64,000 bases of DNA from NCBI RefSeq assembly GCF_000143415.4, contig NW_003314324.1:695379-759378 (forward strand). Reading direction: 5' to 3'. Origin of the DNA: Selaginella moellendorffii (taxonomy: Eukaryota > Plantae > Lycopodiophyta). The first letter of the stretch is position 1. Each line of letters opens with the position of its first letter. The position numbers and the translations under genes were made by a program. Below are positions 35,818 through 40,423 of the stretch, one piece after another. Below the pieces are notes generated by a model. That model was not told the DNA's origin and did no database searches. It saw only the letters and a list, made by a program, of their open reading frames with translations.

Positions 35818-38800
35818 ATGGCGTTGGAGGGGGCGGCGTTCTCTGGCGCCCTGGAGCTCAAGCTCGGGAATGCGGACTGGGAGCGGCGGTTCTTTGTCCT
35901 GATGGCGGCCTCTGGGGATCTGCTGTGCCTGCCAGGTGAGGATTCCACGTTTCGCGATGCGGAGGGCGTCATAAATGTCCGGGAGATGGAGCATTTGGGG
36001 CCGTCTGCTGGCCTGGGCTTCGAGATCGTCGCGCTGGACGAGCAAGGGCAGCGGCAGAGGTATTTTCTGCGCGCGGACAGCGCTCACCAGTCGCAAGCGT
36101 GGTTGCAGCGCATCCAGGAATCCTGCGCCAAGTATGGTGCCAAAATATCGGTTGGTAGCACGAACTTTTTGCTTTTCTTTGTTTAAGTTTGATCCAGTTT
36201 GCTTTCATGGTCTTGTTCTATAGGTAGGAGAATGCTCTCTTCCAGCTCTTTGTTTTGCGTGGCTTGAGTTTTATCCTTCGTTTGTTGCTTAAGTTTGATC
36301 CTTTGTTTGTTCTATAGGTAGGAGAAAGCTCTCTTCCGGAGCTGGATGAAAGGCCTGCCGCTGCAACAAGGTGGAGAAATTTTTTCTTCCGTGCATGACT
36401 TCTTTCATTTCTAAGCTCAACTGGTAAACAATTTTGCATACGTACTGTTGAGGAAAGGCTGACAACTTGAACTTGGCAAGCAGTGAGGAACATGGCATCA
36501 GCAGCACGGCATTGAATAAGTACGACAAAGAGAGGATTCAGTGCCAGTGCTACTTTCCCAGCGGAGACACCGGCGTTGTCATGTTCGTCCAAGGTATGAA
36601 AGGTTTTAATTCTCTCATGTCCGCTGTGGAGCTGCGTTTTAATCTCCAGGATCTGACTTGGTGCGCGACGTAAGAGATCGTCTCTTTATGAACTGTGACG
36701 AGGCGGAGGAGGGGCATCTGGCGTTCGAGTACACGTTGAGACTGGTATAGCCCCACAACTTTTGCGTGGTGTTCATGCGGGTTTTCAGGGTAGTCTCGGG
36801 ATTTATCTGGATGCAAGCGAGGCGTGTAAATCTCGAATGTGCGATAGTACGTAAGTTTGTTGCCACGCTTTCCATTTTTGTTGCTTTCCATTCTTACAAG
36901 CTACTTGATTAACAGCTTCGTCCAGAGCTGCATTGACGAGAAGAAGCCTTTAGTTGTTCATCTAGTGCTGGACCCAGCTGTGTCAGGAGAGCCTCCAGCA
37001 CCAGTATCACCCGTAACACAGAAAGCGGAGGCAAAGCTGAAATTCGAAGAGGTAGACATTCCGAGACTTCTGCTCATCATGATGCAGCCTCTCATTTTCA
37101 AGCTTTTACAGATTTCACATCAAAAGCCAGAGTTTTATGCAAAGGTACAAATTCAGTCCTATGAGAAAAACGTGGACAACGCACTTAAAATTTAGGCAGT
37201 CAAATCGTAAGTTCTTATTGCGGTTGTAAGCTCGTTTTCATTTTACGCCTTGGCTGTTGTCTAAGCAGTTCAGCTCACCGCTTCTTCGCAGAACGTATCT
37301 GCATGTCCACGTTAAAGAATGCTGGTTCAAGGATGGCGTTTTCGAAGAAAGTGACGAAATGCTATACATGAATGTGATTGGAAGCTTGTATCCTTTTTGT
37401 TGGTCCTTACACATTCTGTGACTTTAACTCGCGAAAAGGTACCATGGTAGCCAGCGTCTAGCGACAAACTTGGAGCTGTCGACGACGTTCGTCGCACAGA
37501 GCATTAATCCTCAGTGGAACGAGATTCTGACATTTCCAATACTTCTTTTCGATCTTCCAGAGGTGCAGCTCATTTCACCATTTACTAACGTGATAATTAT
37601 TGTCTTTCATCAGGTAGCTTCTCTCAACTTTGCTGTCTACTCCGGGCATCAGAGGGACTGTCAACTGATCTCGAAGCTAGTCGGCTGGGCCAATTATCGT
37701 TTTATTGATGATTATGGAACTGTTGATTCAAAGGTGAAACATCTCAGGTTGTGGAAAGATCCACCGTATTACACGTGTGGTAAGATATGTTGTTTTGTCC
37801 ACGAATCCTGATCTCTCTACCTGCTGCTTTACAGGAACTGTGCCAGAAAATATGTCGGAAGACTATATTGCTATTCTGGTCGTTTCACTTGACGAATGCT
37901 TCTATCCTTTCAGCCTAAAGATGAGGGAAGACGAGGACGAAAGACAAGCAATGTTTACCAGTACGCTCGAAGATCCGGAGCTCTTTGTGTCGTATCTGAA
38001 AACATTTCTCCCACGTTTTGGGTTGTTGATAGGCGTCCTTTGACAAACTTTTCAGACGATTGTGACTTATTCCCAAGCACCGAGGAGAAGAAGCACATTG
38101 CTCTTTGCGTTGATAGTTATGGTATGTTTTGTGTTTGGCTTCACCCTTATTATCTTTTCTCTCATACCAGATGTTTTTTCTGTACCGTCGGAACCACAAA
38201 AGTCGATCCTTTGGAGGTACCGTTATTCTATCAAGAACAATCCCAGAGCCTTGTCAAGGTTTCTGCAATCGGTCCCATGGCAAAAGTATATTTACGCTAT
38301 GGAAGCACGAAGGCAAGCTGAAAAGTTATTTCGCACGTTGCTCAATACCATATCTTTCCAGGTTGCTGGCAAAATGGGAACCACTGGATCCATACACAGC
38401 TTTACAGGTGTTTTCCAGAAAATCGCCTTGCATTGAATTTTTCTGATTGCACACATACAGCTACTTGGTCCGCAATTTGGAGATCCTGCTGTTCGTAACT
38501 ACGCAGTCTCTGTACTGGAAAACCTTTCGAATGAGGAGATCTGCTCTTTCTTAGTGCAGCTAGTTCAGGTACACTTAAACCAAGCGTCATTCTTAGCTGA
38601 AGTTTTGTGTAACAGGCATTACAGTACGAGCCACGGATAGAGTCCGCTCTTTTGCAATTCCTCGTCAACAAAGCTTCGGTGGACCAATCGCTCGGTTACT
38701 ATTTGTACTGGCACATCAAGGTTTGGCATTTTGTCGTCGTTTTGTTTGTGGATATTGTGAATATTTAATCAATAGCATGTCGAACTGCTTTTAGGCCGGC

Positions 38801-40423
38801 TTGGAGGTTGCCTTCTTCGCAGTGAAGCTTCAGTTTGCAATGAATGAGTTCCGAAAGACTTGTAAGTCACACGTTATGACAGCTCTCTCGAAGCAAGAGA
38901 AGCTGGTACTCTCATTAGCCAACATTGCTCGTGGTATAAGGCAAGTCAAACAGAAGGCCGAGCGTCAGAAGCAACTTATCTCTTTGCTTTCGGAGCTCGA
39001 ATCTTTTGAAAGCGTCGCGTTGCCGGTAGATCCCAGGTAACTGCTTAATTTTGTTTTTGTTCTCCCTTAGTTTAGTCTCCTCACATGGGAGACGTGCCGA
39101 TCACGTAGCTAACACGCATTGGATTCTTTTCAGGTGTGAGGTCAATGGCTTGGAACTGACGAAATGCAAGTACATGGATTCGAAAAAGCTTCCTCTCTGG
39201 CTGGTATTCAAGAATACGGACCGTAGTGTGGAAGAGCACACTTACATTATTTTCAAGACTGGCGACGACCTTCGTCAAGACATACTTACGCTGGAAATGT
39301 TTAGCCTCATGAACAAGGTGAGAGTCTCTCGATACCTCATGTTTTTTTTTCGAGTGCTTTTTTTCTCAGACATGGCTTAGGCACAACCTGGATATGAAAA
39401 TGACAATCTACAGTTGCGTCGCTACCGGCGATAGTAGTGGAATGCTACAAGTCGTCTGGAACTCGGAGACTTTATCCAACATCTGCAAGGTAGACATTAG
39501 TTTGATTGTTGTTTTTACATGTCTTCGAAGTTTTTATTTTCTCTCGATTGTAACTACGATTGCGAAGGCTTCTGGCGGAGGAGTGGCTGTCTTCAAAGAG
39601 GATACTCTTATCAACTGGCTCATGCATGAAACGCAGACTGGTGAGCTCTCAAGTCTATCGCTGGGCTGTTCATGCGAAATGGCTTTTCCTGCAGGAGAAA
39701 ACTATAAAGGAGCACTGGATAACTTCACGAGATCTTGCGCTGGATATTGCGTTGCAACATGCTTGCTTGGGATAGGCGATCGGCATAACGATAATATCAT
39801 GCTCAAGAGAAACGGCCAGTTTTTTCGTACGTTCTCATCTCTTTTGCTTGCATCCAATCTTTGTTTTCTCGTTTTTTAGTTTCACGGGTGTTTCGTGCTT
39901 GTAGATATCGATTTCGGGCACATCTTGGGACATTTTAAGTCGAAGTTTGGCATCAAGAGGGAGCGTGCACGCTTCGTGGTATGAGACATCCAGCTTTGTT
40001 TTATCTTTCGTGTTTAAAAGCTGGATTTTTCTATGTGGTCTCAGCTGACGCCCGACATGGCGTTCGTGATGGGTGGCACACATGACCCTCGTTTCCGGTC
40101 GTTTGAGATACTCTGTGCTCAAGCCTTCAACCAAGTTCGGGCAGAGGCTACAAAGTATCTTAATCTAATGTCTCTGGTATGGTGGCTGCTTTTGTTTAGA
40201 CTTTTCCACCATAGTTTGTGAAAGTTTTACTCTTGCACAGATGATTTCTAGCGGACTGAGCGAAGTCTCCAGCCCCGCAGACGTCCGCTACATGCACGAC
40301 ATAATGCTGCTCAACCTCCCGGACGAACACGCGGCCAAAGAGTTCACGAAATGGATCCACGACAGCCTCCACACGAAATCCACCCAGTTCAACCACGCAA
40401 TCCACACTTGGGTCCACAAATAA
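35818..40423 (+). CDS. Class I/II-like phosphoinositide 3-kinase with N-terminal PH domain, C2, helical and kinase domains (many exons)
   Basis: PH: WERRFFVL...[18 protein letters not shown]2: [17 protein letters not shown]. Kinase: [66 protein letters not shown]. Confidence 0.9.

What the first reader, a model, noticed from the sequence alone, without database searches (positions are those of the whole stretch)
35818..40423. Class I/II-type PI3-kinase with a PH domain in a land plant
Established: angiosperms have only class III (Vps34) PI3K. Seen: [10 protein letters not shown] and a basic activation loop, [13 protein letters not shown], match class I/II enzymes rather than Vps34 (GRDPKP-type loop). 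It also has an N-terminal PH domain and a possible Ras-binding-like region. The gene is intron-rich with host-type short introns and lies among ordinary plant genes, so contamination is unlikely. It implies possible PI(3,4,5)P3/PI(3,4)P2 signalling, for example in flagellated sperm (speculative). Phylogenomic surveys may already have noted it.
Basis: partly seen in the sequence, partly recalled or inferred. Interest (0 to 1): 0.72.

Follow-up and report, generated by a model that had tools for sequence, protein, structure and literature searches.

The report
Animal-type PI3-kinase gene in spikemoss
A spikemoss carries and transcribes a gene for the signalling type of lipid kinase that plants are said to lack; this was noted in 2015, and here the gene proves to belong to an old green-algal family with its own membrane-binding front end, so it was probably inherited, not borrowed.

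Summary
Window 35818-40423 (+) holds a 24-exon gene whose spliced frame gives 987 codons without a stop: PH domain, Ras-binding-like domain, C2, helical domain and a PI3K kinase domain with every catalytic motif and a class I-type basic activation loop. RNA from the same organism is + stranded and shows 18 of the 23 introns directly. A class I PI3K in Selaginella moellendorffii was already published (Philippon 2015, PMC4617754), which left loss, transfer or contamination open. This scan also found the same kind of gene on another piece of this genome (s1-368684).

What I add:
- The gene sits, with 100/100 support, in a clade of PH-bearing PI3Ks from green algae of three deep lineages (Prasinoderma, Crustomastix, Pycnococcus/Pseudoscourfieldia).
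- It shares their N-terminal PH and a KRERA[K/R]F loop signature.
- This favours vertical descent with many losses.

Caveats:
- The only assembled transcripts use a donor at 36424 that stops the frame after the PH exon.
- They also retain a 95-base intron, so a full-length PH-kinase protein is not shown.
- No close relative in another land plant was found, but the search was weak.
- Making PI(3,4,5)P3 is inferred, not tested.

The parts
35818..36150 (+). Exon 1: start codon and the whole PH domain (residues 1-111)
   Evidence: Pfam PH 27.8 bits. A profile of the algal clade's PH domains gives E 3.6e-9. The AlphaFold model has pLDDT 89.9, and its best PDB folds are GRP1, ARAP3, TAPP1 and AKT PH domains. 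The junction 36150>36318 is seen in RNA contigs of two runs.
36213..36337 (+). Tandem duplication inside intron 1 that copies the acceptor and the start of exon 2 (31-base copies at 36213-36243 and 36307-36337)
   Evidence: the repeat finder, 97% identity, spacing 94. RNA uses the second acceptor.
36318..36370 (+). Exon 2, short form: the PH-to-RBD linker, which keeps the PH exon in frame with the rest (987-codon model)
   Evidence: Frame-compatible GT donor at 36371. This donor is NOT seen in the RNA: X2 contig 5 reads 6 bases past it, and X1 contig 1 runs on to 36423.
36371..36423 (+). Extension of exon 2 used by the assembled transcript (donor GTAAAC at 36424). It holds TGA 36396-36398 in the PH frame and ATG 36395-36397 in the frame of exon 3.
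   Evidence: The piece 36317-36422 of X1 contig 1 and depth arithmetic on the bins 36368-36868 fit the chain 36318-36423 / 36484-36593 / 36650-36744 / 36789-36844. Translations are: the PH frame stops at codon 138, and an 868-codon PH-less frame runs from ATG 36395.
36484..36593 (+). Exon 3: start of the Ras-binding-like domain
   Evidence: The acceptor at 36484 fits the X1 depth. It is part of the match to the clade RBD profile.
36650..36744 (+). Exon 4: Ras-binding-like domain
   Evidence: Intron 36594-36649 fits the X1 depth arithmetic. Junction 36744>36789 is seen in X1, X2 and one X18 read. Clade RBD profile match.
36789..36850 (+). Exon 5: Ras-binding-like domain
   Evidence: Junctions on both sides are seen in RNA.
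36916..37051 (+). Exon 6: end of the Ras-binding-like domain and a linker
   Evidence: Junction 36850>36916 is seen in X2. The loose end at 37051 continues with the first letters of exon 7.
37112..37144 (+). Exon 7 (3' end uncertain: 37144 or 37155)
   Evidence: The start is fixed by the X2 loose end. Three frame-compatible ways to reach exon 8 score alike against the clade C2 profile.
37269..37387 (+). Exon 8: start of the C2 domain (5' end uncertain: 37266, 37269 or 37292)
   Evidence: Junction 37387>37439 is seen in RNA. Its 5' end is not covered by any contig that I could place.
37439..37562 (+). Exon 9: C2 domain
   Evidence: Junctions on both sides are seen in RNA. Pfam PI3K_C2. Clade C2 profile E 1e-27.
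37614..37779 (+). Exon 10: C2 domain
   Evidence: Junction 37562>37614 is seen. The loose end before 37834 carries the last letters of this exon.
37835..37960 (+). Exon 11: end of C2 and a linker
   Evidence: Colinear with the clade C2 profile across the exon 10/11 junction.
37961..38055 (+). Inferred intron 11 (GTACGC...TTTCAG, 95 bases), retained in both assembled transcripts; if retained, the frame stops at codon 480
   Evidence: X1 contig 3 and X2 contig 7 run unbroken through 37834-38083 and 37834-38077. The frames of exons 11 and 12 are each fixed by homology, so the frame must change between them.
38056..38121 (+). Exon 12: linker before the helical domain
   Evidence: Homology to the stretch before the helical domain of the algal kin. 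Intron 38122-38170 is inferred from frame only.
38171..38312 (+). Exon 13: start of the helical (PIK) domain, followed by a GC-AG intron (38313-38361)
   Evidence: Pfam PI3Ka. Two loose ends join 38312 to 38362.
38362..38407 (+). Exon 14: helical domain
   Evidence: Junction 38407>38461 is seen in RNA.
38461..38568 (+). Exon 15: helical domain
   Evidence: Junctions seen in RNA. 46% identity to P0162 over exons 13-24 with only 4 gaps.
38616..38720 (+). Exon 16: helical domain
   Evidence: Junctions seen in RNA.
38795..39036 (+). Exon 17: end of the helical domain
   Evidence: Junctions seen in RNA.
39134..39317 (+). Exon 18: kinase N-lobe, with [10 protein letters not shown] and the ATP-binding lysine (IIFK, K730)
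   Evidence: Junctions seen in three runs. The best PDB sequence matches are class I p110 beta, delta, gamma and alpha, E from 7e-13.
39370..39489 (+). Exon 19: kinase domain
   Evidence: Junctions seen in RNA.
39568..39640 (+). Exon 20: kinase domain
   Evidence: Junctions seen in RNA.
39695..39826 (+). Exon 21: catalytic loop [11 protein letters not shown]
   Evidence: Pfam PI3_PI4_kinase 76.9 bits on the ORF that spans it. Junctions seen in RNA.
39905..39978 (+). Exon 22: DFG and the activation loop [14 protein letters not shown]
   Evidence: Sequence. Junctions seen in RNA.
40045..40176 (+). Exon 23: kinase C-lobe
   Evidence: Junctions seen in RNA.
40241..40423 (+). Exon 24: C-terminal helices and the stop codon; no PX or second C2 follows
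   Evidence: Junction seen in four runs. It aligns to the very C-terminus of the algal kin.

Best explanation
This is a resident, transcribed gene of a spikemoss for a class I-type phosphoinositide 3-kinase catalytic subunit. Its domain order is PH, Ras-binding-like, C2, helical, kinase. It has no p85-binding domain at the front and no PX or C2 tail.

It is the land-plant member of a family of PH-bearing PI3Ks that is otherwise found in early-branching green algae (Prasinoderma, Crustomastix, Pycnococcus/Pseudoscourfieldia and many marine metagenome sequences). The simplest history is descent from the common ancestor of green plants, with loss in most other lines.

How it most likely works (inferred): the PH domain, perhaps helped by a small GTPase on the Ras-binding-like domain, brings the enzyme to a membrane without an adaptor subunit. 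There the kinase phosphorylates the 3-position of phosphoinositides. The two basic boxes of its activation loop predict that PI(4,5)P2 is accepted.

Shown: the gene, its domains, its intact catalytic motifs, its transcription and most of its splicing, and its clade. Inferred: that one polypeptide carries both PH and kinase in this plant, the lipid substrate, and the direction of inheritance.
For: - Gene model: 24 exons, 987 codons, no internal stop.
- RNA: first mates all lie on the minus strand, so the RNA is + stranded. There are 15 GT-AG junctions and 3 more from loose ends, in runs of three studies.
- Domains.
- Class: the best solved-structure matches are all class I p110. Every one of about 270 nearest relatives carries the class I loop DFGHFLGN.K.KFG.KRER.
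- Motifs: K730, DRH, DFG and both basic boxes are present. From my own knowledge of Pirola et al. 2001, these boxes include the equivalents of p110alpha K942 and R949.
- Clade: FastTree on 154 rows gives SH-like 99. IQ-TREE LG+C20 PMSF quick gives SH-aLRT 99. IQ-TREE LG+F+G4 gives SH-aLRT 100 and UFBoot 100 for the model plus 13 algal sequences.
- Names of clade members.
- Shared characters: an N-terminal PH domain and K/R in place of P in KRERA[K/R]F.
- Host features: 23 short introns, G+C like the neighbours', plant genes on both sides.
- Prior report: PMC4617754.
Against: - The in-frame donor that joins PH to the rest (36371) is not seen. The assembled transcript uses 36424, which gives a stop 27 codons after the PH exon.
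- Two contigs, one of each allele type, retain the 95-base intron 11, which also stops the frame.
- The branch is long: 1.8 against a median of 0.7.
- The basic cluster of the PH beta1-beta2 loop (RKK in the algae) is reduced to one lysine.
- 5 of 8 coding differences between the RNA and the window change the residue.
- No closer relative from any other land plant turned up.
- The position inside the clade is unresolved at 50/54, so descent and an old alga-to-plant transfer cannot be told apart.
- My trees hold no class II or class III sequences.
Confidence: 0.72

Rival explanations
1. The gene entered the Selaginella lineage by horizontal transfer from a green alga (or from a protist that carried the algal type), and was then domesticated with host introns.
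For: - The distribution is patchy: Philippon 2015 found no other Archaeplastida sequence.
- My searches found no relative closer than about 57% identity in the kinase domain, and that one is an alga of high G+C.
- The position inside the algal clade is unresolved.
Against: - It has 23 spliceosomal introns of host size, while the algal genes are single long ORFs on their contigs.
- Its composition is like the host's.
- The clade spans three deep green lineages, as a vertically inherited gene would.
- My search for plant relatives was weak, because the joined protein could not be used as a query.
Confidence: 0.15
2. The locus is a gene in decay or under unproductive splicing. Its usual transcripts do not encode the full PH-kinase protein, and at most a PH-less or a helical-plus-kinase product is made.
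For: - The donor at 36424 puts TGA after the PH exon.
- Intron 11 is retained in contigs of both allele types.
- Depth over the 3' half is about twenty times that over the 5' half in X1 and X2.
- An 868-codon PH-less frame starts at ATG 36395.
- The branch is long and the PH basic cluster is eroded.
Against: - 987 codons stay open across 24 exons, and every catalytic motif is intact.
- The same libraries hold plainly unspliced pieces (X2 contig 6), so low-depth contigs over-report retention.
- Contigs drop rare isoforms, and the depth gradient fits ordinary 3' bias.
Confidence: 0.2
3. It is a class III (Vps34) or PI4K-type enzyme, or a contaminant contig.
For: None found.
Against: - A Ras-binding-like domain is present, the activation loop is basic, and only class I p110 chains top the PDB list.
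- Plant genes flank it, and RNA of the same organism from several studies is spliced at its introns.
- Philippon 2015 reached the same view on contamination.
Confidence: 0.01

Closest known systems
PH-bearing class I-type PI3Ks of green algae (Pycnococcus provasolii XRB07167.1, Pseudoscourfieldia marina XRB21718.1, Crustomastix stigmatica MMETSP0803, Prasinoderma coloniale PRCOL_00005596, and many marine metagenome proteins such as P0011)
   Same: They share the clade (100/100) and the domain order PH, RBD, C2, helical, kinase. They also share the KRERA[K/R]F loop signature and a protein end just after the kinase domain.
   Different: Identity is 36-46% and the Selaginella branch is long. The PH-RBD linker is about 30 residues against about 180 in the algae. 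The PH basic cluster is reduced. The plant gene has 23 introns, while the algal genes are single ORFs. None of these algal proteins has been studied, as far as the paper library shows.
Mammalian class I PI3K catalytic subunits (p110 alpha, beta, delta, gamma)
   Same: They share RBD, C2, helical and kinase domains, an identical catalytic loop [11 protein letters not shown], and both basic boxes of the activation loop. They are also the best solved-structure matches.
   Different: A PH domain takes the place of the adaptor-binding domain, so there is no sign of a p85- or p101-type partner. Following Philippon 2015, bikont enzymes are a single class I/II-type line and not orthologues of one mammalian isoform.
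Class I-type PI3Ks of protists with other N-terminal modules (Dictyostelium PI3K1/2 and relatives; proteins with SH2, cNMP-binding or RasGEF domains)
   Same: They share the same catalytic core, with a lineage-specific targeting module at the front.
   Different: The module differs and the clade differs.
Plant Vps34 (class III), the only PI3K usually credited to plants
   Same: It has the same kinase superfamily fold, a C2 domain and a helical domain.
   Different: Vps34 has no RBD or PH domain and no basic activation loop, and it makes only PI3P. A 2019 preprint still states that it is the only type in plant genomes.

Membership tests
Class I PI3K catalytic subunit | PI3K/PI4K kinase domain with ATP-binding Lys, DRH catalytic loop and DFG | tested here: met
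   K730 in IIFK, GDRHNDN at 842-848 and DFGH at 861-864 of the 987-residue model. Pfam PF00454 76.9 bits.
Class I PI3K catalytic subunit | Activation loop with two basic boxes (p110alpha K942 and R949 equivalents), which allow PI(4,5)P2 as substrate | tested here: met
   [14 protein letters not shown] at 869-882. The meaning of the boxes rests on my own knowledge of published mutagenesis, not on a test here.
Class I PI3K catalytic subunit | Ras-binding domain, C2 and helical domain before the kinase | tested here: met
   C2: Pfam 27.0 bits, clade profile E 1e-27. Helical: Pfam 28.2 bits on one exon, and 46% identity to P0162 across helical plus kinase. RBD: reached only through the clade profile (E 9e-15), whose algal members reach Pfam PF00794. 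Pfam itself did not hit the Selaginella exons.
Class I PI3K catalytic subunit | N-terminal adaptor-binding domain (class IA) and a regulatory subunit | tested here: not met
   The N-terminus is a PH domain and PF02192 gave no hit. Regulatory subunits could not be searched for in this genome.
Class I PI3K catalytic subunit | Groups with the class I/II cluster and not with class III in a tree that holds all classes | tested here: inconclusive
   All nearest relatives are class I-type, but no class II or III sequence could be fetched for my trees. Philippon 2015 placed the S. moellendorffii sequence as class I.
Class I PI3K catalytic subunit | Makes PI(3,4,5)P3 from PI(4,5)P2 | not testable with these tools
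   This needs a lipid kinase assay.
Green-lineage PH-PI3K clade | Monophyly with the algal members | tested here: met
   SH-aLRT 100 and UFBoot 100. SH-aLRT 99 under LG+C20 PMSF. SH-like 99 in FastTree.
Green-lineage PH-PI3K clade | N-terminal PH domain on the same polypeptide | tested here: inconclusive
   The PH exon is the first exon and is spliced to exon 2 in RNA. The in-frame donor 36371 is not seen, and the transcript assembled uses 36424 and stops.
Green-lineage PH-PI3K clade | K or R in place of P in the loop KRERA-x-F | tested here: met
   KRERARF in the model, and KRERAKF, KRERARF or KRETAKF in clade members. Nearly all other relatives have KRERAPF or KRERVPF.
Class II PI3K | C-terminal PX and C2 domains | tested here: not met
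   The frame ends at 40423, at the position where the algal kin end, with no further domain.
Class III PI3K (Vps34) | C2, helical and kinase only, with a non-basic activation loop | tested here: not met
   PH and RBD-like domains are present and the loop is basic.

The most novel reading that the evidence does not exclude
Green plants began with a self-targeting class I-type PI3K, in which a PH domain replaces the adaptor. A spikemoss still uses it to make PI(3,4,5)P3 or PI(3,4)P2. The choice between the two donors of exon 2 (36371 and 36424) would then decide whether the kinase carries its PH domain. That would be a splicing switch on membrane targeting in a pathway thought absent from land plants.
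Probability: 0.25. Interest if true: 0.75.

Novelty: new variant of a known kind. Interest (0 to 1): 0.5.

Why it matters
Textbooks, and papers as late as 2019, say that plants have only Vps34 and make no PI(3,4,5)P3. The one published exception (Selaginella, 2015) was left unexplained: loss, transfer or contamination. Placing the gene in a PH-bearing family shared with three deep green-algal lineages makes ancestry the leading answer. It implies repeated loss of class I-type signalling in green plants. It also names organisms in which PI(3,4,5)P3 synthesis can be tested directly: Selaginella, Pycnococcus and Prasinoderma. The domain order, with PH in place of an adaptor-binding domain, is a variant of class I PI3K that no paper in the library describes.

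Tried and rejected
- Vps34, PI4K and contamination were rejected.
- An alignment of one algal backbone with the exon translations (A1) scattered the fragments. A2 still misplaced the PH, C2 and first helical exons.
- A3, which has well-placed exons, returned only its own first sequence as a profile query in the search for homologous proteins. The words were probably drawn from the variable first 500 columns. That search was lost.
- The ORF 39394-39879 as a query found no fragment closer than 39-44% identity. The representative search with the same ORF found nothing above about 60% over a long stretch. The window's own protein did not appear in either, so these blanks are weak evidence of absence.
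- The careful PMSF tree did not finish in three runs. I replaced it with IQ-TREE LG+F+G4 with bootstraps.
- Three ways to join exons 7 and 8 could not be told apart, and many GT/GC-AG pairs could bridge exons 11 and 12.
- The search of earlier findings by sequence and by relatives gave blanks.
- Paper searches for class I PI3K in green algae found nothing relevant.
- The PDB fold matches of the PH domain are headed by 3-phosphoinositide binders, but I do not take that as evidence of lipid specificity.
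Full report
**What is there**

ATG at 35818 opens an exon that Pfam calls a PH domain. The frame of the last exon ends at 40423. All the quoted motifs are present.

Per-exon Pfam scans give PH, PI3K_C2, PI3Ka and PI3_PI4_kinase. The N-lobe exon matches only class I p110 chains at the top of the PDB list, from E 7e-13.

**Gene model**

I built the model from RNA junctions and, where those were missing, from frame and homology. 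It has 24 exons and 987 codons with no internal stop. The 23 introns are 44-167 bases long, with a median of 56, and one is a GC-AG intron.

The joined protein was used only in local scripts.

**Expression**

- Runs labelled with the same organism hold the gene.
- Four runs from three studies were laid on the locus. All first mates of the stranded raw-read run lie on the minus strand, so the RNA is + stranded.
- Fifteen GT-AG junctions are seen directly. Three more follow from loose ends (37051>37112, 37779>37835, 38312>38362). Intron 36594-36649 fits the depth of X1 contig 1 bin by bin.
- Expression is low: 23 reads in about 9 million records of X18. Coverage is 3'-biased.
- The differences between the RNA and the window show two allele types, and both are expressed in X18.

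**Two places where the RNA does not support the full-length frame**

1. The PH exon stays in frame with the rest only if exon 2 ends at 36370. X2 contig 5 reads past that donor. X1 contig 1, by its piece ends and by depth arithmetic, runs 36318-36423 and then 36484-36593. This longer exon 2 puts TGA 27 codons after the PH exon. An ATG that overlaps this stop (36395) opens an 868-codon PH-less frame.
2. The 95 bases 37961-38055 must be removed to pass from the frame of exon 11 to that of exon 12. Both frames are fixed by homology. Yet the 95 bases are retained in one contig of each allele type, which would stop the frame at codon 480.

The same libraries contain plainly unspliced pieces (X2 contig 6), and contigs drop rare forms. 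So this is not proof against the full-length message. It does mean that a single PH-kinase polypeptide is inferred rather than shown. Introns 37145-37268 and 38122-38170 are also unconfirmed, and the exon 7/8 junction has three equally good solutions.

**Domains**

- PH domain: exon 1 folds as a PH domain (pLDDT 89.9), and its best PDB matches are PH domains. It aligns with the PH domains of the algal kin, with ten invariant columns.
- Ras-binding-like domain: residues 135-239 match a profile of the region that Pfam calls PI3K_rbd in P0169, P0171 and P0184 (E 9e-15).
- C2 domain: it matches the clade profile at E 1e-27.
- Helical and kinase domains: they are 46% identical to P0162 over 507 residues with four gaps, which also validates exons 13-24.
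- Catalytic motifs: the lysine, DRH, DFG and both basic boxes of the activation loop are intact.
- Ends: there is no adaptor-binding domain and no PX or C2 tail.

**Relatives**

The representative search with the largest kinase ORF returned only class I-type proteins. The best full-length match, P0011, has the order PH, C2, helical, kinase.

A search from P0011 found more PH-bearing proteins, one of them named Pycnococcus provasolii. Cluster look-ups added three more names: Pseudoscourfieldia marina, Crustomastix stigmatica and Prasinoderma coloniale. By my own knowledge, these are two chlorophyte lines and the separate phylum Prasinodermophyta.

The trees agree:
- FastTree on 154 rows gives SH-like 99.
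- IQ-TREE LG+C20 PMSF on 55 rows gives SH-aLRT 99.
- IQ-TREE LG+F+G4 gives SH-aLRT 100 and UFBoot 100 for the Selaginella model plus 13 algal sequences.

The clade also shares K or R in place of P in KRERA-x-F. The position of the plant sequence inside the clade is unresolved (50/54), and its branch is long.

**What is known**

Philippon et al. 2015 reported a class I catalytic subunit in S. moellendorffii as the only one in Archaeplastida. They offered three readings (loss, transfer, contamination) and rejected contamination.

I did not verify the species name myself. It rests on earlier notes of this scan, on the match to that paper, and on very short introns.

An earlier agent of this scan reached the same reading on another piece of this genome (s1-368684), probably the other haplotype. 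My results were obtained independently of its details, and they agree.

I found no paper on PH-bearing PI3Ks of green algae. A 2019 preprint still calls Vps34 the only PI3K of plant genomes.

**Reading**

The gene is a real class I-type PI3K of a green-lineage family. Descent with many losses is the best reading. An old transfer from an alga is not excluded, because no streptophyte alga or second land plant could be placed.

My searches for such relatives were weak. The joined protein could not be used as a query, one profile search failed, and the exon-level search found nothing close.

Whether the plant makes a full-length enzyme, and whether it makes PI(3,4,5)P3, remains open.

Noticed in passing
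window 36213-36337: Intron 1 holds a tandem duplication (spacing 94, 97% identity) that copies the acceptor site and the first bases of exon 2. RNA uses only the downstream copy.
   Followed up: partly
window 38313-38361: This is a GC-AG intron (GCAAGC...CCAG), supported by two RNA loose ends. The other 22 introns in the model are GT-AG.
   Followed up: partly
window 38372-40700 against 35818-38371: Contig depth over the 3' half is about twenty times that over the 5' half in runs X1 and X2. This may be 3' bias, or a shorter transcript covering only the helical and kinase domains. An ATG at 37896 opens a frame that reaches exon 12 if intron 11 is retained.
   Followed up: no
window 40135-40543: The RNA shows at least three haplotypes of the last exons and the 3' UTR. 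The differences include a 7-base deletion at 40461. The X1/X2 type and the window type both appear in the X18 reads.
   Followed up: partly
window 12023-13105 and 17797-18876; 21002-22360 (-): Two near-identical blocks of ORFs lie about 5.8 kb apart and look like a repeat pair. A reverse transcriptase / RNase H ORF of a retroelement lies at 21002-22360. The ORF 8197-10743 carries DUF7869 (140 bits).
   Followed up: no
proteins P0227, P0234, P0203, P0205, P0255, P0095: Class I-type PI3Ks of protists carry other front modules in the precomputed Pfam lists: SH2, cyclic-nucleotide-binding, and RasGEF in Andalucia. The swap of a targeting module at the N-terminus therefore seems common.
   Followed up: no
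proteins P0045 and P0267: A PI3K labelled Schistocerca gregaria groups with unnamed protist-like sequences, not with the animal enzymes. A full class I-type PI3K is labelled as coming from an archaeal MAG. Both look like foreign DNA in those assemblies.
   Followed up: no
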